Translations under genes and position numbers: made by a program
The notes under the pieces: generated by a model
What the model was told of the DNA's origin: nothing
Databases searched by the model: none
The model's input: the letters and a program-made list of their open reading frames with translations, nothing else
Origin: Paragordius varius
Lineage: Eukaryota > Animalia > Nematomorpha
Assembly: GCA_964247055.1 (NCBI GenBank)
Contig: OZ176055.1
Coordinates: 620,001 to 684,000 of the forward strand
Length of the DNA: 64,000 nt
Direction of reading: 5' to 3'
Shown here: positions 1-23,292 of the stretch, piece by piece
How the letters are laid out: each line of letters starts with the position of its first letter
Position numbering within the stretch: position 1 is the stretch's first letter

Positions 1-990
1 CCTAGTTACAAATATTCTTTCAAACGCTTACAAAGAAAAAGAGGGATTCTACATTTTAACTTCTTCATATAAACGACCCATTCATCAAAAACCATGCTAA
101 TGAGAAACTAGTTAATACAGAAAAAAATTTAAATAAACTCAGTTCCAACACACGACCCAATTTGCAAATACGTGTCCGGTAATGAAGATGGTGCCAATTA
201 ATATATTAATTATTTCATGTAAAGTTTTTTGCTTGCAAATCTTCTCGCCCTTGCCGCTACATGGAAACCTCTAGGCATTTCTATCGTTATTCAGCTCGGT
301 GGCAATCTTATAGCTTTTAAATTGGAAAAATTTTATTGTAATATATTACAAAATGCAATAAGAAGTGAGTAAGTTGAGAATCTCTATTACCTCGTCAACC
401 AAGGGATAATAATAAAATGTGTTGCTCTAAATCTGGTTAACCATTGCTTAATACACAGGCATTACATTGAGGCACAACAAGGTGGATAACTATATCAATT
501 CGAGAAAAACATCCGAGAATCAAAAGATTGACGAGCCCAACCTCCTACCGGATTTAGTAATAAATGGGAATACCAATTGCTGGTACCTTTTAAAAAGAGA
601 CATCATTAGACGACGCATAAAACACCACACTATATACATTCACTTGATCTGTAACCTTCAGAAAAATACTCCAACGATTATATCCCATTATAAGAGCTTT
701 GCTCGTGGTACCCCCAGATTAATAGACTTTTTGATGATTTAAAATTAAAAGTCCAGTCGTATCAAACAAGAACACATCTCGGAAGTAATTAAATCATTTT
801 GCGACATTTATCAGTAGTCGAAACATGTAGCCCCCAAGTAAAACGCCCATCGATATCTTACCCAACAATTAACCTCCGTGCCCAACCAAACATAATTTTG
901 TGAGTGCTCCATTCATACTTTATCTTCCCAGCCCCCGTTGTCTTCTTTCCTACTTTTTAATGATTTATTTGCTTCGGGAAAAAGAAATTT
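1..990 (+). mobile_element. Decayed RLE-type (NeSL/Utopia-like) non-LTR retrotransposon 3' fragment, copy 1
   Basis: ORF 467-742 and neighbouring frames give RHNKVD..KIDEPNLLPDLVI..NTNC, homologous to the intact RLE domain at 11023-11661. Frameshifted. Duplicate of 15363-16350. Confidence 0.8.
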
Positions 991-1930: not shown

Positions 1931-4699
1931 TATGTTCAGGTTTACTGACACCTTAAATGTTAGAACATTTAATTTTACAAAATTAAATTTTTTTACTCTA
2001 TCGTTTTGACTAAAATGGCCAACATAGTCCAATGCCAAATCAATATTTTTTTGAATTAGGGAAAAGGGCGGCTGCTCTAATTTATTTTAGTTGATAAATA
2101 TATTTTGAATAAGTTAAATAAAATAAAATTAATTTGGAGAATAAAATGTCATATTTTAATACTTCAACGCGCCCATTAAGATCGATTGAAAAAAATGGTT
2201 TGTCTTATTTTAGTAAATCGATGTTAAATAAATGCTAACTTTTAATGATAATACCTTATATCAGGAGCTTCCACCACAAATGCCTTCGCGAGCGGCATTC
2301 GAGAAATATCTGGGCATTAACAAAATTTTATTGGCTTTCAAACATATGACTTTAAAAACTACTCAATATTTTAACAATTTTTGCTAGCTCATTCCTTTTT
2401 TACAACATTGGCCCGATTTAAAACTAATATATTATGAAATATATAAGGGAGGGGCCGCATGGGGTCGTCCATAAAATTATTGTAACCAGCAAGAAATTTC
2501 TGCAAAATTTTACGAAATAAATAATATTAAATTTTTTAGTATAATTTTTTTGATTTAAAAAGATCTTAACGTTAGAATTCAAAACATACAATGACACTTG
2601 TTAAATACAAATATATTTATTATTCAAGCCATTTAAATTTTTACGCCTTCAATTTTATATAATTTATAAAATTTTACAATTATTATTTTAATAAATAGCT
2701 GTTTCTTTCTCTTAATCTTTGTCTTAATATAAAATTTTATTTTTGTTTAGCTAATTATGTACGGCAGGTGGTGTTCAGTATAGAGGAAAAGGGACTTTTT
2801 TACTTTGAGATAATAATTTAATACAGTTTGGATTTTTTAGATCCATTTAAAAAAAGCTTAATCATATATTGTATTTTCGATCAATATTTTAATTTGCCAT
2901 CTAAAAACAGTATGTCGACAATTGTATAAATACTCAATATTTTTTATAAAACCATTATAAATTTTTTCCTTATCATTTTTTTTTGCTCATCCTTAATTAT
3001 TAACAAATACCAGGTAAATTTCGCAAAATTTCAATAATTAATCCAATTTTATTTTATGATTTTTAGAAAAAACTGCAACATCATAAAACTATTACATGTT
3101 TTATCGGTGATTTCGGTCCCAATTTTGGGTATATTTTATTTTTAGTTTTAAACAAAAAAAAACACTGATATTACTTAAAAATATTTTTGTTGATTTTATC
3201 AGTTGGTTATTTTTTTCATATTTAATAATTGTTTAATTTCCAAGGCTACATGTCTGTGACCGCGGAAGATAGAAAACCGGTTGAAGAGCCCATCGCAGTT
3301 CGAAAACATTACCCAGGAACTGGTTACCGTGATATCCCTAGACACAAATGAACCATAAAAGTGTTTATGAAACAATATTTTTACTGTTTTAGGCCTAGTC
3401 TATACTTTAAACCCAATTTTTAACAATTAAACACCAATATTTTGTTACTTCCTAATTAATATTGTTATAAATAAATAATTAGTTTAATTAGATACATTAT
3501 ATAGTGATGATAGAGATTATATAATTGGTGGCGATATATTATGGTGAACGTCATTAGGTTTCACTTAATTACTTTTTAATATACCCTTAACGAAAGATTA
3601 TCAATATATTGTACATTCAAGCTATATCCAGTCTTTATGGAAAATTGGAATCACAGTCTGGGTTCTAATAATGTGAATGGTTTGATAAAATGTTTATCTA
3701 TATAAACTTATTCCTGTAAAATATAATATAACATGGAATATTAATTTAATTAGAAAATTACAGTAAAAATCAAAATTATAAAGACATATAAAAATCATAT
3801 ATTTTTTACATAACAGCCATACGTTTTAAACCTTTAATTAATACAATTTTAAATATAATTTTTTTTAAATAGTATGGCTGTTTTTTCATAGAATATTTGT
3901 CTCAGTTTTTACATTTTTTTAGTATTTTTTAATTTATATCAAATCTTCTTTCAACATTAGAAATTTTTTATTAAAATTATAATAGTCAACCTGACCCTTC
4001 CTACTATTCTGGATTCAATAAGGTTGTTTTGAATTGCAATATGAAATTAGGAGCCCTCATAAATTTATAATATAATATAAATATGATTTGCTTTTTAAAA
4101 TGTTGGTTATGATACAATGATATTTGGAATGTAGCATTTAAATCAAATTTAAAATATGCTCTAATTTTGCGATTTTGTGAAAGAACGCTATAAAAAGTAT
4201 ATAAAATTTCCTTAGATCAGTAAGACCCAAACCACCATTGTGTGGAAGAAGCAGAGCTTTTCTCTCAGCTCAATATAGAATTTTTTGGATTTAAAATTGA
4301 CAGATATGTTGTTTTTTTTTAAAAACTACACCGTTTCCATCAAGATCATACCATAAATGCTCTTTAAAAATAATTAATAAAATATTTTATTATGAATCAT
4401 AATTCTAGTATATATTCGAATCTCGCAATCTCTGCTATATAATTTAAATATAAAATATTACTCATCTTGGGTTGCTATATAGTGGATAGAGATATAAATG
4501 TTCAGTTAAGTTCAAAATAGTAATTGAATACTTTGTGTAGGAATATAAATTATGGTATTTTTATTATTAAAAATTTAATAATTTTAATTAAATTGATGTG
4601 ATTAAACGACTTGTTAAATATTAAAAGCATCGAATTCTGACACATTACCAGAATATATGTTATTTATGATATTTTCTGCTCCACTGCCCACAAAAGGGG

Positions 4700-9399: not shown

Positions 9400-10050
9400 C
9401 AAATTGAAAAAAAACGAAAATGTATATTTTATCGAGTAAGAATAGAGGAAAGCGGGGTTATAATCAATAAAATGTAGTTAGGCACGTCATCATTTGTAAG
9501 ATTTTTTACACTAATAAATAAATAGTAAATATTAGAACTGGCTTTCATTGTGCTAACTAGGTCTTGCTTAAGTTTAAGGCCGTTTTGAATGTTAAAAATA
9601 TCAAAAATATTGCCTAAACGGGGAGACCAACACAAAGTTCCTGTTATTTCAACGTTAAAACAACGCTTTTAAGTGTGCTTATGGCGTACATCACTGTTTT
9701 TTCGTTGAAGGCACGCCTCTAAAGCATAAAGTCTGGTTGGATCTAATGAATAGCATTTTGGGTATCTGTTATAATTAGATCCGGTATGAGGCGATAAGCA
9801 TCAACTAATTGATTTTTTGGAAATTATTTTGTATTTTGCAGGGATATTAAATTGATTTTTGCGTTTATTAAAAATATTTTTTTGTCAGGAGGCTCCCATG
9901 GAGACGTTGATTGCATTAGAGCCGTTTCATTCCTACTGTTTGCACGTCAACAGTTTTTTTAGCCTGGATTGACGGTAGCTAGTATAGTGCTGTGAAGAAA
10001 TATTTAATCACGATATTTCAGATTTCGCTAGCTAAAAATTAAGTATTAAA
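9400..10050 (-). mobile_element. Decayed RLE-type retrotransposon fragment, copy 2
   Basis: ORF 9429-9635 (..GLKLKQDLVSTMKASSNIYYLFIS..) is homologous to RIKQDLIAEVLKFSCDIYHLFISG at the end of the 11023-11661 ORF. Confidence 0.7.
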
Positions 10051-10551: not shown

Positions 10552-10683
10552 ACGCAGAACCCGGCAGCCAGAAATTATGCGCTCGGCTTGCCCCCATTTG
10601 GGGCAATCGTAGCCTTCAACTTGGCCGAGGTGCAATGGCCAAGTCTCAAACTAAGGGTATCGCCTTCTTGATCGCGATGGTTA
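10552..10683 (-). ncRNA. U1: U1 snRNA sequence, lacking the 5' ~20 nt and truncated in stem-loop IV
   Basis: Minus strand: atcgc-GATCAAGAAG-gcgat (stem-loop I, U1-70K loop); ttggcc-ATTGCACctc-ggccaa (stem-loop II, U1A loop); ttgcccc-aaat-ggggcaa-like stem III; Sm site ATAATTTCTGG. No ATACTTACCTG 5' arm. Probably a pseudogene. Confidence 0.92.
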
Positions 10684-10816
10684 CAATTTATTAAATAAGT
10701 AATATAAATATTTAAAATACATTGCTGTAAAAGAAAAGGCAAAGGTAGGAATAGCTTATAAATAATATAGGATAAATAATACGTAGTAAAATTAATATAC
10801 GTTGTGAATTCTAAAA

Positions 10817-10818
<2 letters not shown>

Positions 10819-10866
<48 letters not shown>
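10819..10866. repeat. (AT)n microsatellite in the retroelement 3' UTR
   Basis: About 24 AT units read directly. Confidence 0.95.
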
Positions 10867-10868
<2 letters not shown>

Positions 10869-11022
10869 ATAATAATAGGGGAAAGAAGACAGCGTGAATG
10901 GGAGAGTGCAAAGAAAACTTAGCACATATTTTGTTGTAATATAAATGCTGATTGTTTGAATAAATAAATATGTAATAAAACAAAGAGTAACAAGGGGGGA
11001 TGAAATGCGAGATTGTATAGAA

Positions 11023-11661
11023 TTAATTTTGACTTGAACAAAAAGGCTGCTCGTTGGGAGGGTCGACTATGGGAGTCACACTTGGCGGTTGGATATTCCG
11101 ACCACTGATGAATAGGTGGTAGATATCACAGGAGAATTTGAGCACTTCTGCGATTAGGTCTTGTTTGATACGGTTTGGGTATTTTATACCAAGTGCATCG
11201 AAAAGTTTGTCATTTCGGGAGTACCAGGAGCCAAGAGCTCCTATTACCACTGGGATAATTTCAACGTTAGAATATTTTTCAGAGAAGGAGCAAATCAAAT
11301 GATCGTATTTTGTGAGCTTGGTGTTATAAGCATCTTCTAAAGATGATACTCTATCATAAGGGATTGTGGGGTCGATAATGTAACAATTAGTATTATCAGC
11401 TATCACTAGGTCGGGACGCAGGTTTGAGTCATCAACCTTTTGATTTTCGGAGATAATCGAGAATTTTTTGGGTAGTATTGATTTAATGGAGTCAACCACT
11501 TTGTTGTGACGCTCGGTGACAATACCTGTGTCTATCAGGCAGTGATTTATTACATGAGATCCAGATTCAATCCGGATCTTGCACCTTCTACAAGAGGTAT
11601 CGTCGAACCTTCTTGGTTTGTAATTAAGAGGGAGAATGATCTGGTATGAATAAATCTCCAA
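11023..11661 (-). CDS. Non-LTR retrotransposon C-terminus: CCHC zinc knuckle plus PD-(D/E)xK restriction-like endonuclease (partial)
   Basis: CRRCKIRIESGSHVINHC, RHN, RPDLV, IIDPTIPYD, KLTKY, PVVIGALGSW, SCDIYHLFISG: the motif order of R2/NeSL/Utopia RLE domains. The RT is missing from this copy. Confidence 0.9.
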   Translation of the reverse strand: MEIYSYQIILPLNYKPRRFDDTSCRRCKIRIESGSHVINHCLIDTGIVTERHNKVVDSIKSILPKKFSIISENQKVDDSNLRPDLVIADNTNCYIIDPTIPYDRVSSLEDAYNTKLTKYDHLICSFSEKYSNVEIIPVVIGALGSWYSRNDKLFDALGIKYPNRIKQDLIAEVLKFSCDIYHLFISGRNIQPPSVTPIVDPPNEQPFCSSQN

Positions 11662-11752
11662 TCCTTAAACCTCAGGTTTTTGCCCTAAAATAAGAAGGAA
11701 TGGGAGATTTATCTATGCGACACATTCCAATCCTCCCTTGGTTTACAAGGTG

Positions 11753-13214
11753 CATGACAAAAGTTAGACGCAATCAAAAGCTTCTATTACCTAACTTTAA
11801 CGTACTACCTTTGGTTAAATCAATTTAATTTCGCCACCAGCGACAAACTAGATACACAGATGTTGAGTATCCTAAAACCAATACTGGGGCTCCCAAAAGA
11901 CGCTAAACCACATCTTTGCATTGGGAATAAGGCGAGCCCTAGCTAAAAAGTCATTTCAACATCTTTAGAATCGATGCAGCCTTCAAATCGATTCATTCAA
12001 ATGACCAAATGGTCAAAAAATATGCACAAAACGAGCTCAATTTAACAGCATCAATTACGCGGTGATCACTTGCTCAAAAATTTTCAATCTCACTTGGTGC
12101 GAATGGGTCCCCCTAGGTGATTCTTCCTTAGCCATTCAGTTTCATGAAAGCCTAATAGTCCCGGACAAGAAAATTCCCATGTTCACCTTTTCCGGAATGC
12201 AATAAGAGGCGAGAAAGACCAGAATTTCCACCACCTTGCAAACAATTAAAGGATAATGGAATCTCTCGCCATGGATAAATCTTCCCATTCCTTCTTATTC
12301 TCGGGCAAAAACCTAAGGTTTAAGGATTGAAGATTTAGTCATAGGGCAAACTCAGCCTTTTCCCTCTTAACAGCAAACCGGGAAGGTTCGACGATACCTC
12401 ATCAGAAGGTGCAAGAACCGGATTGAATCTGGATCGCATGTAATATATCACTGCCTGATAGACACAGGTATTGTCGCCGAGCGACACAACAAATTGATCG
12501 ATTATATTAAATCCTTATTTCCCAAAAAATTCTCTGTTATATCTGAAAATCAAAAGGTTGATGACTCAAACTTGCGACCTGATATAGTAATAACTGATAA
12601 TCTAACCGCTACATAACAGACCCGACGATCCCCTATGAAAACACTCTTTTCATTAGACGACGCATTTAACACCAAGCTCACTAAATATTATCACCTGATC
12701 TGCCCCTTCTCTGGAAAATACCCCGATGCTGAAATCATACCTGTAGTGATAGGAGCCCTAGGATTATGGTACCTACCCTTCAAATGACAAACTTTTTGAC
12801 GCACTTGAAATAAAACACCCCACCCATTTCAAACAAAAGCTCATCCTGGAAGTGCTTAAATCTTCCTGTGACATCTACCACCTGTTCATCAGTGGTCGGA
12901 ACGTTCAACCTCTATCTGATACTTCTGTATTGCCTCCCCCGTCAACAACCTCAGTGGCCAAGCCAAAATTAGTCCTATGCAAACTCCTATTCTCACCTTT
13001 TCTCCATCTTATTTTATATATATTTTTATTCTTACAAATATTATAAATTCCTTATACCTTTATAGCCTTTTCTTATATTATCATACAAATGGCATTTGTA
13101 GTAAAACAATAGATGTAATTTTTATTTCCATTTATCCATATATATTCATTCCCTTGACTCTTTTTCTTTTACAATTTCTATTGATATGTTATTATTAAAT
13201 TCTTTAATAAATTT
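11753..13214 (+). mobile_element. 5'-truncated decayed RLE-type retrotransposon, copy 4, with 3' UTR joined to U1
   Basis: Begins in the RT thumb (QKLDAIKSFYY..LGLPKDA), continues through CCHC/RLE (frameshifted; ORF 12852 LKSSCDIYHLFISGRNV) and a ~290 bp UTR ending ..TTTAATAAATTT before the U1 sequence. Confidence 0.85.
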
Positions 13215-13361
13215 TAATTATCTCTGACCAAGAAAGGAGATATCCTAGTTAAAGGTTAACCATTGCACTTCGGTTTTGCTGATAGCTATAACTACTCCAA
13301 ATTGGGTTACGTTAAGCACATAATTTATGGGTGTTGGCGGTTTGCGTTCGCGCTTACCGCC
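13215..13361 (+). ncRNA. U1: Divergent U1 snRNA variant lacking the 5' ~20 nt
   Basis: atctc-tGACCAAGAAag-gagat (stem-loop I); aacc-ATTGCACttc-ggtt (U1A loop); Sm site ATAATTTATGG; intact stem-loop IV ggcggt..gcg-TTCG-cgc..accgcc. Confidence 0.88.
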
Positions 13362-13399
13362 TTATATCTCTTAAGTTAAATTTACTTTTTTAAAAGCCA

Positions 13400-15190
13400 A
13401 TTTTATCTTGAGCACGAATGTTGGTTCTCGGGGGAGGCAATTACGGAAGTTTTAGATAGAGATTAAACGTTCCGATCACTGATGAATAGGTGGTAGATGT
13501 CACAAGAGCATTTTAAGCACTTCCGCGATGAGTTTTTTTTGATACGGATGGGGTATTTTATTCCTAATGCATCGAAAAGTTTGTCATATCTGGGGTACCA
13601 TGAGGCTAGAGCTCCTATTACTACAGGGATAATTTTAACGTTAGAGTATTCACCTGAAAGGGAGCAGACGGTCATACTTTGTAAGTTTGGTAGTGTAGGC
13701 ATCATCTACGGATGAGAATCTGTTGCAAGGAATTGTAGAATAAATGATGTAGCAATCGCTATTATCGGTATCAAGTCCGGTCTTAAGTTTGAGTTATCAA
13801 CCCTTTAATTCTCTTATCGAAAACCTATTTAATATAATCGACTACCTTGTTGTATCGATCGGTGACAATACCTGTGTCTATGATGGATATTCCTAATTAA
13901 ATTGTTCTGGCACCTGAAAGTGTTATCATCGAACCTTTCCGGTTTGCAGTTAATGGGCAGCAGGTTGAGTCTGGCCCTATGAATGAATCTCCAGTCATAA
14001 ACAGCTTTTTGCCACAGAAGAAAGGAATGGGATGATCCAAGGCAACGCATTTTATTATCCTCCCTTGGTTCGCGAGTTGTAATAAATTCTCATATTTCTC
14101 ACCTCTTATTGCATTCCAGAACAGGTGAATTAGAGAATTGCTCAATTGAATAGCGAAACAGTCACCTAGGAGTTTCCAAATCGCAGCAAGTGAAATTCAG
14201 AATTTGTAAGCAAGGGACCATACGTTCCCATGATTTATGTAGCCATTCACTTCCTCCTATTCAGAGAAATATTGACACATTTGTTTATGGGTTGGGGCTG
14301 AAATGAGTTTAAATATTTTTGTAACTGTTAGATTAAGCTTTTCTAGATTTCCATAGGGTCATTTGAGTCAAGAAGAAAGGTAGCATCAATTCTGAAGATG
14401 TCAAAATCGTTTAAGAGCTGGAATGCCAGCTCTCTTACTCTTCGGTGCAAAGGTGTAATTGTTAGTAGCATCTTTTGGAAAGCCGAATAGTATTTTTACG
14501 ATACTTGGCATATGTGTATTAAGTTTGTCACTAGTGGCGTAATTAAATTGATTTAAACGAAAGTCATATGTTAGAATTTGGTAATAAAAGTTGTTTATTG
14601 CATCTAACTTTTGCATAGTGGCAAGGTTGGATATCGCAATATTGTCAAGCATTTCAATTACTGCGGGAAATGGTAGGGAATAACACTAATAGATTCCCTG
14701 ATATTTTTTGGTGTTCTCCACAATTATTTTTATTTTGATTTTCAGGATTAATAAGATGAACCCGATTCAATTCATTGACAATAAAATTAATATTATTTTG
14801 GTGATTATTATGGGATATGCATATAAATCAATCCCTTTATCGGGGGCCCGCTTGATGATGTTATTTAATCCAATTATAAATAGGAGCCCTGAGAGTAGGC
14901 ATCCTTGTTTGATGCCTTGATCCAGTTTGATCGGGTAAGACATATCGTTGTCGGAACGAATGGATGTGTAAGTATTTGATAGGGAATTGGAGATTAGAGA
15001 GATAGGCTCTTCGAGACGCCTAGACTTTTCAGGTTATCGTGGATGGGCGGATGTGGAATTTTGTCGAATGCATTGGAGATAAAGGCATCTGATATGGGCT
15101 TGCTTCCTCTTCTGTTTTTTGACGCCTTAATGACCAAGCTAGCCGCATATAAAGGCGGTTCATATTTAGTGGTCAACAAATTACATGCCC
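13400..15190 (-). mobile_element. Decayed RLE-type retrotransposon, copy 5 (RT through RLE, 3' UTR missing)
   Basis: Fragmented frames: NAFDKIPH (14994-15179), IKQGCLLSGLLF, QKLDAINNFYY..FGFPKDA (14401-14652), LANQGRIIKCV, DWRFIHRARLNLLPIN (13829-14050), PVVIGALASW..DIYHLFIS (13463-13705). Confidence 0.88.
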
Positions 15191-15194
15191 CTTA

Positions 15195-16350
15195 GCCAAA
15201 ACAACCTATTATTACACTTTCAAAAAGGTATCCCCTGCTCTAAGTAGAAGCGGAAACAAGCTTTTATTACCTGCATCGATGTCTTTAAAATATTCGATAA
15301 ATACCTCATGCAGTAATTCTCACCAACCTCAAAAGATTATTTATAACCCTTAACCGTATTTCCCTAGTTCCAAATACTCTTTCAAACGCTTACAAAGAAA
15401 AAGAGGGCTCTCACCCAAAACTGTTTTAATGTTTTTTCGAATAGATGCTACATTCAAACTTCCTCATAAACGACCCATTCACAAACCATGCTAATGAGGA
15501 ACTAGGTAATATAGAAAAAAACACACTCAGGTCCAACACACGACCCAATTTGCAAGCACGTGTCCGGTAATGAAGATGGTGCCAATTAATATATCAATTA
15601 TTCCATATAAAGTCTTTTGCTCGCAAATCTCCTCTCGCTCTTGCCGCTACATGGAAACCTCTAGGCATTTCTTTTTTATTCAACTCGGTTGCAATCTTAT
15701 AGTTTTTAAATTGGAAAATTTTTATTGTAATATAATATAAAATGCAATAAGTAGTGAGTAAGATAAGAACTTCTCTTACCTCGTCAACCAAGGGATAATA
15801 ATAAAATGTATTGCTCTAAATCTGGTTAACCATTGCTTAATACACGGGCATTACAATGCGGCATAACAAGGTGGATAACTACATCAATTCGAGAAAAGCA
15901 TTCAAAATCAAAAGGTTGACGAGCACAACCTCCTACCGGATTTAATAATATCTGGGAATACAAATTTCTGGTACCTTCTAAAAGAGACATCATTAGACGA
16001 CGCATAAAACACCACACTATATACATTCACTTGATCTGTAACCTTCAGAAAAATACTCCAACTATTATATCCCATAAGAACTTTGTTCGTGGTACCCCCA
16101 GATTAATAGACTTTTTGATGATTTAAAATTAAAAGTACAATCGTATCAAACAAGAACACATTTCGGAAGTAATTAAATCATTAGGCGACATTTATCAGTA
16201 GTCGAAACATGTAGCCCCCAAGTAAAACGCCCATCGATATCTTACCCAACAAACCCTGTGCCCAACCAAACAAATTTTATGAGTGCCCCGTTCACACTTT
16301 ATCTTCCCAGCCCCCGAGTCTTCTTTCCTACTTTTTAATGGTTTATTTGC
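15195..16350 (+). mobile_element. Decayed, internally deleted RLE-type retrotransposon, copy 6
   Basis: RT motif remnant (CIDVFKIFDKIPH near 15265-15310), followed by RHNKVD..PDL..RLE remnant (15850-16200). Paralogue of copy 1. Confidence 0.78.
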
Positions 16351-21519: not shown

Positions 21520-23292
21520 TAAACAAAAAATAAAATTGTCAACAAAAAGTCTCGAGATCGCAGAAAAACGTAGAGAATCCAAAATCAAATGAAAATGGGA
21601 TGAATACAAATAACTAAACAGTGAATTTCAAAAGAGTGCAAGAGAGGTCAAAAATAATTATTATGACCAATTGTCTAAAAATTAGAAACAGGCGCCAAAA
21701 ATAACCGAAACTTTTTCCATACAAACAATATTATTCCACACAAAAAGGCTTTTTACAAGGGACCTATGAGAAACGACAACAACTCAATCGTCACTGAAAA
21801 AGAAAAGTCGCAAACTCTGGCTTAAACACATAAGTAAACTATACAACGTAAATAACTCCCAATCAGAGGGGCACAGAGACATCCCTACAATAATAAAATA
21901 TATCCCAATCGATATACTTACCAAATTATTACAAACCATATTTGAGATGGAAAAATTTTTTGAGGATTGGTGCACATCAATTATGATTCCTATTTTAAAA
22001 AAGTAATCCAGAACTGTGCGACAACTATCGCATAGCGCTCTATAACAAGGTGTCCAAAGTTTTCCTAAAAATAATACAGTTTCGACTAAATTCCTTTCTT
22101 GACCCCGAGATATCGACGATTCAGGCTAGTTTTCGAAAAGGTAGAGGATGCCGAGATATGATATGCAATATGAGGTGGATACTAGAGAAACACATCGAAT
22201 TTAACAAAGAACTGCACATGTGCTTTGTCAATTTTTCCAAAGCATTTGATTCCATCCAACACAATAAATTAGGAACATCCCTAAAACAACTTGGAGTATC
22301 AACACATCTAATCAACGTCATATTTTCAATTTACTTAAATTCCACAGCTATAATATCTACACCTCACGGTATATCTGATTCATGTAAGGTACAAGTCGGC
22401 CTACGCCGAGGATGCGTTTTATCCCCAATTATTTTTAACGCATACCTCGAATGTATAATAAGAAACATCCCAGAAACTTATGGCATTAATGTAGGTGGAA
22501 ACCTACTTATATCCGTTCATTACGCGGATAATATAGTCTTATTCGCTGACAGTGTAGACACATTATCGCAAGCCTTTCAAGTGTTTACAACTGAATGCAA
22601 TAAATTCGGATTAAATATCAAGTTTAAAAAAACAAAAGTTATGCAAATCAACCCGGATCAAACAACTAATTTAATAATCCTAAACGGTAATCAGATTGAA
22701 ACGGAAAACAGTTACACGTATTTGGGCAGCATTATAAACAATGACAACAACTCTACTCCCCAAATGAAACGTAGAATTGCTACCGCAAAAGCAGTCAAAT
22801 TCAAATATAACAAGATTTGGACGTCACATGACATCAAACTAAAAACCATAATCAAATTAATCAAGGCCACAATTTTCCCCACATTCCTGTATGGGGGGAA
22901 AGCTGGATACTGAAATGACGAACGACTAATAAATCTTTTCGAATTATGGGTTTGGTGGAAACTTCTCCAAATAAAATGAACAGACAAAATTTCTAACACC
23001 ACTATTTTAAATAAAATAAACCCGGAAATGTCACTTCTAGGCAGCTTAATACGGCAAAAACTATCTTTTTTCGGGCACATTATGAGAGCCAAGAAAAGTC
23101 ACTGATGCTGGTAAAAGCGAATGGTCCTCGCAAAAGAGGAAGAAGACGAGCGGTTAGGATGGATAACATTTTTAAAGAAATCAACAATCACTATCCGAAC
23201 TCAACGTTAGATCCGGTATTCCCAATGAATGGAGAAGCTATATTTTCAATGTTGCAGTTAGTCGGAATCGACTTTAGCAACAACAACAACAA
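21520..23292 (+). mobile_element. 5'-truncated RTE-clade LINE with (CAA)5 tail
   Basis: RT ORF 22050-22913, RTE-type C-terminal remnant (GPRKRGRRRAVRMDNI) and caacaacaacaacaa tail at 23278-23292. The empty site is visible in copy A near 5075. Confidence 0.85.
22050..22913 (+). CDS. Reverse transcriptase domain (RTE-clade, degenerate)
   Basis: QASFRKGRGCRD, FVNFSKAFDSIQH, GLRRGCVLSPIIFN, HYADNIVLFA (YADD changed to YADN), YTYLGSII. Confidence 0.85.
   Translation: MSKVFLKIIQFRLNSFLDPEISTIQASFRKGRGCRDMICNMRWILEKHIEFNKELHMCFVNFSKAFDSIQHNKLGTSLKQLGVSTHLINVIFSIYLNSTAIISTPHGISDSCKVQVGLRRGCVLSPIIFNAYLECIIRNIPETYGINVGGNLLISVHYADNIVLFADSVDTLSQAFQVFTTECNKFGLNIKFKKTKVMQINPDQTTNLIILNGNQIETENSYTYLGSIINNDNNSTPQMKRRIATAKAVKFKYNKIWTSHDIKLKTIIKLIKATIFPTFLYGGKAGY

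What the first reader, a model, noticed from the sequence alone, without database searches (positions are those of the whole stretch)
10552..13361. Candidate U1 snRNA-targeting RLE retrotransposon: two copies end at the same position inside U1
Seen: the two retroelement copies with intact 3' UTRs (10684-11752 on -, 11753-13214 on +) both end ..TTTAATAAATT(G/T) and continue without a gap into TAA(CC/TT)ATC(G/T)C, the start of U1 stem-loop I. Both U1 sequences lack the ~20 nt 5' arm (ATACTTACCTG..), and element and U1 are in the same orientation in both. Established: the protein motifs (DWRFIHRARLN, CRRC..H..NHC, RPDL, GALGSW, DIY) are NeSL/Utopia-type; Utopia inserts into U2 snRNA genes, NeSL-1 into spliced-leader genes and R2 into 28S rDNA. 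Inference: this family uses its RLE to cut U1 genes about 20 nt from the 5' end. I know of no RLE-clade family described as U1-specific but cannot search. An insertion there removes the 5' splice-site-pairing arm and would put the element under the U1 promoter with a short U1 leader.
Basis: partly seen in the sequence, partly recalled or inferred. Interest (0 to 1): 0.92.

Follow-up and report, generated by a model that had tools for sequence, protein, structure and literature searches.

The report
U1 snRNA gene-targeting retrotransposons
This animal genome carries jumping genes of the R2/Utopia type that insert at one fixed spot, about base 21/22, of U1 splicing-RNA genes, a target I did not find reported for this class, and one copy looks recently active.

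Summary
In the window, two 5'-truncated retroelement copies lie head to head. Each ends in ..TTTAATAAATT(G/T)TAA and runs straight into a U1 snRNA gene that lacks its first 21 nt, in the same orientation.

Genome-wide, about 14 of 19 element 3' ends abut U1 at nt 20-23. They fall in three U1 sequence variants. They belong to two families that share only about 38-43% protein identity.

Two full-length copies are preceded by a U1 promoter plus U1 nt 1-17/22. One of them (chromosome piece C6 at 3.725 Mb) has an uninterrupted 1289-aa ORF: zinc fingers, RT, then CCHC and a restriction-like endonuclease. Another sample of the same species label shows the unfilled, intact U1 at that site. Near-identical copies also lie elsewhere, one carrying a 10-nt U1 tail.

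The same genome holds U2-specific Utopia elements, and all three lineages form one clade. So this is a Utopia-related lineage retargeted to U1.

The window's own two junctions are old, dead copies. As a unit they have been segmentally duplicated within the U1 cluster.

I found no U1-specific non-LTR element in the literature. Repbase, Dfam and Fell et al. 2025 could not be checked. The scan's first readers flagged the same thing in neighbouring windows.

The parts
10554..10680 (-). U1 snRNA gene remnant, variant A: nt 22 to ~150. It lacks the 21-nt 5' arm and the last ~16 nt.
   Evidence: Rfam U1 61.5 bits. It is 96-99% identical to other A-type remnants, and its printed sequence agrees with the intact A-type gene L001 from nt 22 on.
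10681..11752 (-). Family-1a element, 5'-truncated. It matches positions ~3349-4340 of the 4340-nt full-length copy. It holds the CCHC+RLE ORF (11023-11661), a 3' UTR with a (TA)n run at about 10822-10868, and the terminus ..TTTAATAAATTGTAA.
   Evidence: ORF list; blastn to the full-length copy; terminus defined by off-target copies.
11753..13217 (+). Family-1b element, 5'-truncated (matches positions ~2761 to the end). The ORF is broken by stops and frameshifts. It has its own 3' UTR, ending ..TTTAATAAATTTTAA.
   Evidence: tblastn and blastn. The 3' UTR recurs 5 times in the genome, always before B-type U1.
13218..13363 (+). U1 snRNA gene remnant, variant B: nt 22-165.
   Evidence: Rfam U1 71.2 bits. 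It matches the intact B-type gene L002.
13364..13408 (+). 3' flank of the U1 gene. A TAAATTTAC/AAATTTAG-type motif about 15-20 nt downstream may be the 3' box.
   Evidence: Related downstream flanks, with a shared motif, are seen after intact and interrupted B-type U1 genes. L002 and L009 are nearly identical to each other, while the window's flank is related but diverged.
13469..14916 (-). Older family-1-like fragment without a 3' UTR. It is part of the repeat unit that follows B-type U1 genes, intact ones included.
   Evidence: blastn. The same arrangement follows the intact U1 at C6:606254.

Best explanation
The window holds two dead, 5'-truncated copies of a single-ORF, restriction-like-endonuclease (RLE) non-LTR retrotransposon lineage that inserts sequence-specifically into U1 snRNA genes. 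Insertion is between about nt 21 and 22, on the 5' strand of stem-loop I, in the orientation of the U1 gene.

Shown:
- The 3' junction is precise and repeated, in three U1 variants and for two diverged families.
- 5' ends vary through truncation.
- Two full-length copies sit directly behind the U1 promoter and U1 nt 1-17/22, with at most 1-3 nt of target change.
- One locus is filled in some samples and unfilled in another.
- Near-identical dispersed copies exist, one with a 10-nt U1 tail.
- The proteins are of the R2/Utopia type, and the sister elements in the same genome are U2-specific.

Inferred mechanism, by analogy with R2 target-primed reverse transcription:
- The N-terminal zinc fingers (and probably other parts of the protein) bind conserved U1 DNA flanking the site. 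ACTTACYTGGCGC lies upstream and GATCAWGAAGG downstream, while the bases at the cut vary.
- The RLE nicks the bottom strand.
- The nick primes cDNA synthesis from the element RNA, whose 3' end carries a short U1 tail able to pair with the primer.
- Second-strand cleavage falls almost opposite the first, so there is no target-site duplication.
- Full-length copies are probably transcribed from the U1 promoter with a U1 leader.

Copy number in the U1 cluster also grew by segmental duplication of already-interrupted units.
For: U1 calls: (17 U1 loci scored, 4 intact and 13 lacking the 5' arm).

3' junctions in register.

Second family at the same site: it shares 43% amino-acid identity over the RLE region and has a different 3' end..AAAATAAATAAATA|CCAATCGTGATC.

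5' junctions: GTACTTACTTGGCGCAGGATTT|GTTGCACGGCG.. (C6:575 kb) and ATACTTACCTGGCGCGG(AGC)|TCTGCCC.. (C6:3.725 Mb), each behind a TATA-like U1 upstream region.

Full lengths are 4340 and 4101 nt, with an intact 1289-aa ORF in the latter.

Domains:
- zf-C2H2, and RVT_1 at 2.9e-38.
- RT plus CCHC/RLE align to solved R2 proteins (9nl3_A, 1.4e-53).

Polymorphism: contigs of runs X1 and X3 bridge the 5' junction. Run X4 has no depth over element positions 331-550. Two of its contigs continue from U1 nt 17 into GGCCAATCGTGATCA, which is an intact U1.

Dispersed copies at 99.5-100% identity lie on C4 (10-nt U1 tail) and C8.

3' end census.

Discordance: the window's copy in A-type U1 is 93% identical to a copy in B-type U1, but 71-80% identical to other copies in A-type U1.

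U2-specific sisters in the same genome.

Tree: all three lineages form one clade (support 100) nested among arthropod sequences. The nearest tested outside relative, P0006, is flanked by U2 on both sides.
Against: - Specificity is not absolute. Family-1 copies on C11 and C29, and family-2 copies on C4 and C8, are not in U1 genes.
- Nearly all U1-associated copies lie in two U1 clusters on one chromosome piece. At least one unit, the window's, is a segmental duplicate. The number of independent insertions (I count about 8, by distinct 5' ends, U1 type and family) is therefore well below the number of junctions.
- U1 remnants are more alike than the adjacent elements. This points to gene conversion and weakens U1 type as a marker of independence.
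- No RNA data: no listed run is on record as RNA. Transcription from the U1 promoter and current activity are therefore not shown.
- The unfilled form in X4 could be a paralogue absent from this assembly rather than an allele.
- No cleavage biochemistry exists.
Confidence: 0.88

Rival explanations
1. One or two ancient insertions into a U1 gene were multiplied by tandem, inverted or segmental duplication and homogenised by gene conversion. On this view there is no U1 target specificity.
For: The window unit is colinear across its head-to-head breakpoint with the unit at C6:585-589 kb. Similar units recur at 598-601 and 613-616 kb. U1 remnants are 96-99% alike while adjacent element sequence is 70-90% alike, which suggests conversion. 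Almost all copies sit in two clusters on C6.
Against: - At least 8 different 5' end points occur, two of them full-length.
- Two families with about 38-43% protein identity and unrelated 3' UTRs sit at the same U1 nucleotide, within 1-2 nt.
- Insertions occur in three U1 variants, two of which also have intact genes with matching flanks in this assembly. The third variant's intact form was seen only in run X4.
- Element relatedness is discordant with U1 type.
- One locus shows a filled/unfilled difference between samples.
- Dispersed copies at 99.5-100% identity, one with a U1 tail, show retrotransposition from a U1-resident source.
Confidence: 0.06
2. The U1 segment (nt 22-165) is part of the element itself: an acquired 3' tail or a 3' transduction carried along at each retrotransposition. 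The element would then insert without regard to U1.
For: A family-2 copy on C4 carries 10 nt of U1 after its 3' end at a non-U1 site. A family-2-like copy carries 17 nt of U1. So element RNAs do extend into U1.
Against: - The sequence beyond the U1 part continues as the normal 3' flank of U1 genes, the same as after intact genes.
- Full-length copies are preceded by U1 nt 1-17/22 and the U1 upstream region.
- The unfilled form is a contiguous intact U1.
- Off-target copies carry 0 or 10 nt of U1 (a family-2-like copy inside the U1 cluster carries 17 nt), never the ~144-nt U1 segment.
Confidence: 0.03
3. Targeting is real, but it is set mainly by base pairing between the U1 tail of the element RNA and the target, or by homology-driven repair. 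The protein would have little sequence specificity of its own.
For: RNA templates carry U1 sequence downstream of the element. An AATAAA motif lies 6-9 nt before the element end in both families, which would place RNA 3' ends inside U1. Reviews report that some R2 orthologues can be redirected through template homology arms (PMC13586686).
Against: Off-target copies show that insertion can occur without U1 pairing. U1- and U2-specific sisters differ throughout the protein, and each keeps its own site. Nothing here separates the contribution of protein from that of RNA.
Confidence: 0.15

Closest known systems
Utopia (U2 snRNA gene-specific RLE non-LTR retrotransposons; Kojima & Jurka 2015, PMC4640811)
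   Same: - Single ORF with 1-3 N-terminal zinc fingers, RT, and a C-terminal zinc finger plus RLE; no Myb domain.
- Insertion inside a spliceosomal snRNA gene, near its 5' functional region and in the gene's orientation.
- Precise 3' junction and variable 5' junction.
- No target-site duplication, as in arthropod Utopia.
- Disrupted target genes outnumber intact ones.
- Several families share one small target array.
- U2-specific members live in this same genome and form one clade with the U1 elements. Their 3' terminus (..TTAATAAATTATA) resembles family 1 (..TTTAATAAATTGTAA).
   Different: The target is U1 at nt 21/22 instead of U2 after GUAGUA (nt 38/39). The two target sequences show no evident similarity. 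The family is defined and named by its U2 association, which these elements lack.
R2 (28S rDNA-specific RLE element)
   Same: The RT and CCHC/RLE regions align to solved R2 proteins. The inferred target-primed reverse transcription and co-transcription with the host gene are the same. So are a downstream target sequence on the RNA, 5' truncations, and spread both by retrotransposition and by recombination within the target array.
   Different: The target differs. No Myb domain was detected. No HDV-like ribozyme was found at the 5' end by Rfam. The host promoter would be an snRNA-type promoter rather than Pol I.
NeSL-1 (spliced-leader gene-specific, nematodes)
   Same: An RLE-clade element that targets a small multicopy RNA gene.
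   Different: No Ulp1-like protease domain was detected. The target differs.
Dada-U1 DNA transposons (zebrafish; PMC3706591)
   Same: The only U1 gene-specific mobile elements I found in the literature. They show the same logic of hiding in a multicopy small-RNA gene.
   Different: They are DDE transposase elements with 6-bp target-site duplications, inserting at a different U1 site (GCGAAT). They are unrelated in protein and mechanism.
Keno (APE-type, Tx1 group, U2-specific)
   Same: An snRNA gene-specific non-LTR element.
   Different: It has an APE endonuclease and targets U2.

Membership tests
RLE-bearing (R2-superfamily) non-LTR retrotransposons | Reverse transcriptase domain of non-LTR type | tested here: met
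   Pfam RVT_1 at 2.9e-38 over aa 577-819 of the 1289-aa ORF. phmmer to R2 structures: 9nl3_A 1.4e-53, 8gh6_A 9.4e-28.
RLE-bearing (R2-superfamily) non-LTR retrotransposons | C-terminal CCHC zinc knuckle followed by a PD-(D/E)xK restriction-like endonuclease; no APE domain | tested here: met
   Second aligned stretch to R2 chain 919-1159, covering CRRC..H..C, RPDLV, IDPT and K..KY. The same motifs are in the window ORF 11023-11661. A sub-threshold Pfam PD-(D/E)xK hit (L_protein_N) was found. No APE family was reported.
RLE-bearing (R2-superfamily) non-LTR retrotransposons | Precise 3' junction at a fixed target position, with 5' truncations | tested here: met
Utopia | Insertion into U2 snRNA genes (nt 38/39) | tested here: not met
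   Families 1 and 2 are flanked by U1, never by U2. The U2-specific relatives in the same genome do meet this feature.
Utopia | RT phylogeny inside the Utopia clade | tested here: inconclusive
   The U1 elements form one clade (support 100) with this genome's U2-specific elements. That clade nests among spider, tick, aphid and crustacean sequences, one of which (P0006) is flanked by U2. No named Repbase Utopia, NeSL, R4, HERO or CRE references were available.
Utopia | One to three N-terminal zinc fingers, RT, C-terminal zinc finger plus RLE; no Myb | tested here: met
   zf-C2H2 at aa 257-279, with further CCHH/CCHC-like motifs at aa ~183-240 read from the translation. No Myb hit.
R2 | 28S rDNA target and Myb DNA-binding domain | tested here: not met
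   The flanks are U1. No Myb domain was found in Pfam.
NeSL-1 | Spliced-leader gene target and N-terminal Ulp1-like protease | tested here: not met
   No PF02902 hit in the ORF. The target is U1.
Dada-U1 DNA transposons | DDE transposase and 6-7 bp target-site duplication in U1 | tested here: not met
   The ORF is RT plus RLE. Target change is at most 1-3 nt and there is no duplication.

The most novel reading that the evidence does not exclude
Within one animal genome, a single Utopia radiation has split into U2-specific and U1-specific lineages: one or two target switches, with the order unresolved. The U1-specific family 2 is still mobile. It would be transcribed from the U1 promoter with the 5' splice-site-pairing arm as its leader, and primed through a short U1 tail on its RNA. 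That would give a natural matched pair (same host, same backbone, different snRNA target) for working out how RLE retrotransposons change target, and it would add a new natural landing site to the repertoire of site-specific retroelements.
Probability: 0.5. Interest if true: 0.72.

Novelty: new variant of a known kind. Interest (0 to 1): 0.62.

Why it matters
Site-specific RLE retrotransposons (R2, NeSL, Utopia and others) are models for how selfish elements find safe sites. They are now also scaffolds for targeted gene insertion. U2, spliced-leader, rRNA, tRNA and 5S genes are known targets, but I found no report of a U1-specific non-LTR element. Only the unrelated Dada-U1 DNA transposons target U1.

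Here U1- and U2-specific sisters coexist in one genome, which offers a direct comparison for mapping the determinants of target choice.

The load on the host is also notable. Of the 17 U1 loci scored, 13 are interrupted and 4 are intact. Two of the four intact genes carry C9U in the 5' splice-site-pairing arm.

Tried and rejected
I stitched overlapping loci returned by the genome search instead. Parts of C6:582-597 kb and 617-620 kb were not seen.
- Rfam found no ribozyme or other RNA family in the 5' regions of the two full-length copies.
- No RNA run holds the locus, so expression and the U1-leader transcript could not be tested. All laid runs were contigs, so depth says nothing about copy number.
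- Two of the three nearest outside relatives checked (L063, L064) had no snRNA in their flanks. No second species with U1 targeting was found.
- The tree could not resolve whether the two U1 families are sisters. It gives a trichotomy with the U2 lineage, and the AU test of U1 monophyly gives p = 0.152, which does not reject it.
- Fell et al. 2025 (Nature), an inventory of site-specific retrotransposons in 4,464 animal assemblies, is not held.
- A 14-nt U1-like 5' match on C1 (L048) is followed by non-element sequence. Given the control counts, it is probably chance.
- Organism identity is coded in the tools.
Broken copies were read with X at each break, for the tree only.
Full report
**1. What is in the window**

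Rfam finds two U1 snRNA matches: 13199-13363 (+, 71.2 bits) and 10554-10702 (-, 61.5 bits). In both alignments the U1 body from stem-loop I onward is genuine. The first ~21 model positions, however, are occupied by AT-rich sequence ending ..TTTAATAAATT(G/T)TAA.

Upstream of each U1 lies the 3' part of a retroelement in the same orientation.
- Copy 1 occupies 10681-11752 (-). It has an intact 212-aa ORF (11023-11661) carrying CRRC..H..HC, RPDL, IDPT and KLTKY.
- Copy 2 occupies 11753-13217 (+). Its reading frame is broken.

The two copies meet head to head at 11752/11753. Off-target copies on another chromosome piece end in AAATTGTAA before unrelated DNA.

**2. Genome-wide picture**

The window is G000:C6:620001-684000, in a 110.6-Mb genome of 30% G+C.

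A U1 scan scored 17 loci.
- Four are intact. Two are of variant A (GCACTTACCTGG..) and two are of a B-like variant (ATACTTACTTGG.., that is C9U).
- Thirteen lack the 5' arm and begin with an element 3' end.

The interrupted genes belong to three U1 variants (A, B and C). The A and B remnants match their own intact counterparts. Related downstream flanks follow intact and interrupted B-type genes, and L002 and L009 are nearly identical to each other.

I then took a census of 3' UTR ends that does not depend on U1 (with 31, 32 and 50).

| Element group | 3' ends reported | Followed by U1 | Not followed by U1 |
|---|---|---|---|
| Family 1a | 10, plus the full-length copy at C6:571 kb | 8 | C11 twice and C29 once (C29 repeats one C11 locus) |
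| Family 1b | 5 | 5, all B-type U1 | none |
| Family 2 | 3 | 1 (U1 variant C) | 1 with a 10-nt U1 tail, then unrelated DNA (C4); 1 with no U1 (C8) |
| Family-2-like copy | 1 | 17 nt of U1 | none |

One C6:600.6 kb end is reported in both the 1a and the 1b search. Overall, about 14 of 19 distinct ends meet U1 at nt 20-23.

**3. Two families, one site**

Family 2 shares only 43% identity with the window ORF over the RLE region and about 38% over the whole protein. Its 3' UTR is unrelated and ends ..AAAATAAATAAATA. It nevertheless joins U1 at CCAATCGTGATC, within 1-2 nt of the family-1 junction (TAA|CAATCGTGATC) in the same U1 variant.

**4. 5' junctions**

A genome search for the U1 5' arm (ACTTACYTGGCG) gave 7 hits.
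- Four are the intact genes.
- One is probably chance.
- Two are followed by element 5' ends.

The two junctions are as follows.
- At C6:575 kb: GTACTTACTTGGCGCAGGATTT|GTTGCACGGCGAAACTCTGTCC... This heads a 4340-nt full-length family-1 copy with a broken ORF. Its 3' end meets B-type U1 at nt 22.
- At C6:3.725 Mb: ATACTTACCTGGCGCGG(AGC)|TCTGCCCAAATTTT... This heads a 4101-nt family-2 copy with an uninterrupted 1289-aa ORF.

Both are preceded by the AATT(T/A)ATAT box at the same spacing upstream as in the intact U1 genes. The two families share the 5' motif CTCTGYCCAAATTTTATYTGA. Target change is at most 1-3 nt, so there is no target-site duplication and no sizeable deletion. Arthropod Utopia behaves the same way (PMC4640811).

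**5. The protein**

- Pfam finds zf-C2H2 (aa 257-279) and RVT_1 (aa 577-819, 2.9e-38). It finds no Myb, no Ulp1 protease and no APE domain.
- Against solved structures the C-terminal 694 aa match R2 proteins (9nl3_A 1.4e-53; R2Tg; R2Bm 8gh6_A) in two stretches. One covers the RT. The other covers the CCHC knuckle and the RLE.
- This is the Utopia domain plan: zinc fingers, RT, then a zinc finger and RLE (PMC4640811).

**6. Independent events versus duplication**

The U1 cluster at C6:565-634 kb is partly built from segmental duplicates. The window's unit is [U1-A <- family 1a | family 1b -> U1-B, followed by an inverted older fragment]. It aligns colinearly across its head-to-head breakpoint with a unit at C6:585-589 kb, and similar units lie at 598-601 and 613-616 kb. 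The window's two junctions are therefore old, and each has paralogous copies.

Duplication alone still cannot explain the pattern.
- The copies have at least eight different 5' end points. In full-length coordinates these are 1, 231, 450, 1390, ~2750 and ~3349 for family 1, and 1 and 2998 for family 2.
- They lie in three U1 variants and belong to two families.
- Element relatedness is discordant with U1 type. The window's family-1a coding part is 93% identical to the copy in B-type U1 at 571 kb, but only 71-80% identical to other copies in A-type U1.

U1 remnants are more alike than the neighbouring element sequence. This points to gene conversion within the array, so U1 type alone is an imperfect marker of independence.

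**7. Evidence of recent movement**

Family 2 has copies that are 99.5-100% identical on C6, C4 and C8. The C4 copy ends ..AAATAAATA CCAATCGTGA and then continues in non-U1 DNA. Its RNA template therefore extended 10 nt into U1, which means it came from a U1-resident source.

I laid public contig sets on the 5' junction locus.
- Runs X1 and X3 come from different studies and carry different organism labels. Both contain contigs that bridge the junction without a mismatch.
- Run X4 has the same species label as X1 but comes from another sample. It has no depth over the first ~220 nt of the element.
- Two X4 contigs leave the reference after U1 nt 17 and continue GGCCAATCGTGATCA. That is an intact, unfilled U1 of variant C, a form absent from this assembly.

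This is most simply a presence/absence polymorphism, although a paralogue missing from the assembly is not excluded. No run on record as RNA holds the locus, so expression is untested.

**8. Relatives**

The same genome carries U2-specific elements with 1278-1293-aa open frames. They insert after GTGTAGTA| TCTGTTCTTATC, the canonical Utopia site, and end ..TTAATAAATTATA, much like family 1.

The best outside matches share 34-42% identity over the RT-containing region. They come from spiders, ticks, aphids and crustaceans, which are groups listed as Utopia hosts. Of three outside relatives whose contigs I fetched, one (P0006) is flanked by U2 on both sides and two have no snRNA in their flanks.

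In maximum-likelihood trees, family 1, family 2 and the U2-specific lineage of this genome form one clade (support 100) with an unresolved three-way split, nested among the arthropod sequences. Forcing the two U1 families together costs 2.8 log-likelihood units (p-AU 0.152). One switch or two are therefore both possible.

A caveat applies: the AT-rich composition and long branches could pull this genome's sequences together artificially.

**9. Mechanism**

Shown: the anatomy of the insertions, the domains, the polymorphism and the U1 tail on a dispersed copy.

Inferred from established R2 biology (target-primed reverse transcription):
- The protein recognises conserved U1 DNA on both sides of a variable cut site. 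ACTTACYTGGCGC lies upstream and GATCAWGAAGG downstream. The bases at the cut are GGGC|CCAT, GATT|TTTC and GGGC|CAAT in the three variants.
- The RLE nicks the strand antisense to U1 between nt 21 and 22, and the nick primes cDNA synthesis.
- The AATAAA motif 6-9 nt before the element end would place RNA 3' ends a few nucleotides into U1. This fits the 10-nt tail and gives a short primer-pairing region.
- The second-strand cut lies almost opposite the first.
- Full-length copies sit 17-22 nt behind the U1 start site, so the U1 promoter probably drives them with the 5' splice-site-pairing arm as leader.
- No 5' ribozyme was detected.

**10. Novelty**

Paper searches returned three kinds of relevant result:
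- Utopia and Keno, which target U2.
- NeSL, CRE, R2 and others, which have other targets.
- Dada DNA transposons, the only U1-specific mobile elements found (PMC3706591).

The Utopia paper holds no occurrence of the term 'U1 snRNA'. Recent reviews describe Utopia as U2-specific or of unassigned target (PMC13580325, PMC13188248). I could not consult Repbase, Dfam or Fell et al. 2025.

I therefore rate this as a new variant of a known kind: a Utopia-related lineage with a new target.

First readers of this scan noted the same phenomenon in neighbouring windows of this genome. Those notes are not independent evidence. I did verify the locus of one of them, the intact element at C6:3.725 Mb.

Noticed in passing
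L002 (C6:606254-606419) and L004 (C6:3718553-3718717): Two of the four intact U1 genes read ACTTACTTGG, that is C9U in the 5' splice-site-pairing arm. The two A-type genes start GCAC instead of ATAC. With 13 of the 17 scored U1 loci interrupted, which U1 genes supply the cell is an open question.
   Followed up: no
L025-L031, L047 (C5:12.73 Mb, C5:12.78 Mb, C3:0.41 and 4.53 Mb, C6:9 kb, C2:11.98 Mb): These are U2-specific Utopia elements with open frames of 1278-1293 aa, inserted after GTGTAGTA in U2. At least two 3' UTR types occur (..TTAATAAATTATA and ..CTATAATAAATTA), and L030 shows a tandem arrangement.
   Followed up: partly
L044 (C4:7793796-7796001, -) and L046/L056 (C8:179941-182789, +): These are 5'-truncated family-2 copies, 99.5-100% identical to the U1-resident copy, lying outside U1 genes. 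The C4 copy keeps a 10-nt U1 tail (CCAATCGTGA) and the C8 copy keeps none.
   Followed up: partly
L023 (C11:474235-475248, -), L040 (C11:643392-644408, +), L041 (C29): Family-1a 3' parts end in AAATTGTAA and are followed by TCAACTTCAACC.., not by U1. A family-2-like fragment lies about 50 nt further on. C29 appears to be a redundant copy of the C11:643 kb region.
   Followed up: partly
window 10822-10868, with equivalents in L066 and L069: A (TA)n microsatellite inside the family-1a 3' UTR varies greatly in length between copies.
   Followed up: no
L059 / regionA C6:3729388-3729540: Between the U1 that ends the intact family-2 copy and the next family-1 copy lies an inverted 17-nt U1 fragment (CCTTCATGATCACGATT) joined to an inverted AT-rich end. 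This suggests nested or rearranged insertions in the second U1 cluster.
   Followed up: no
L062 (ENA metagenome contig, 6235 nt): The nearest outside relative tested (P0006, 40% identity) sits inside a U2 gene, with an intact U1 gene about 750 nt upstream on the other strand. This is a linked U1-U2 unit with only U2 occupied.
   Followed up: partly
window 455-901 (+), 9453-9755 (-), 15819-16253 (+), 22023-22736 (+): The window holds further degenerate RLE-element fragments (27-47% identity to the query ORF) and a distant RT-like stretch. It is littered with old copies beyond the two in the finding.
   Followed up: no
L048 (C1:12682534, -): ATACTTACCTGGCG is followed by unrelated AT-rich sequence with no element ORF. 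Given 2+2 control hits, this is probably a chance 12-mer match.
   Followed up: partly
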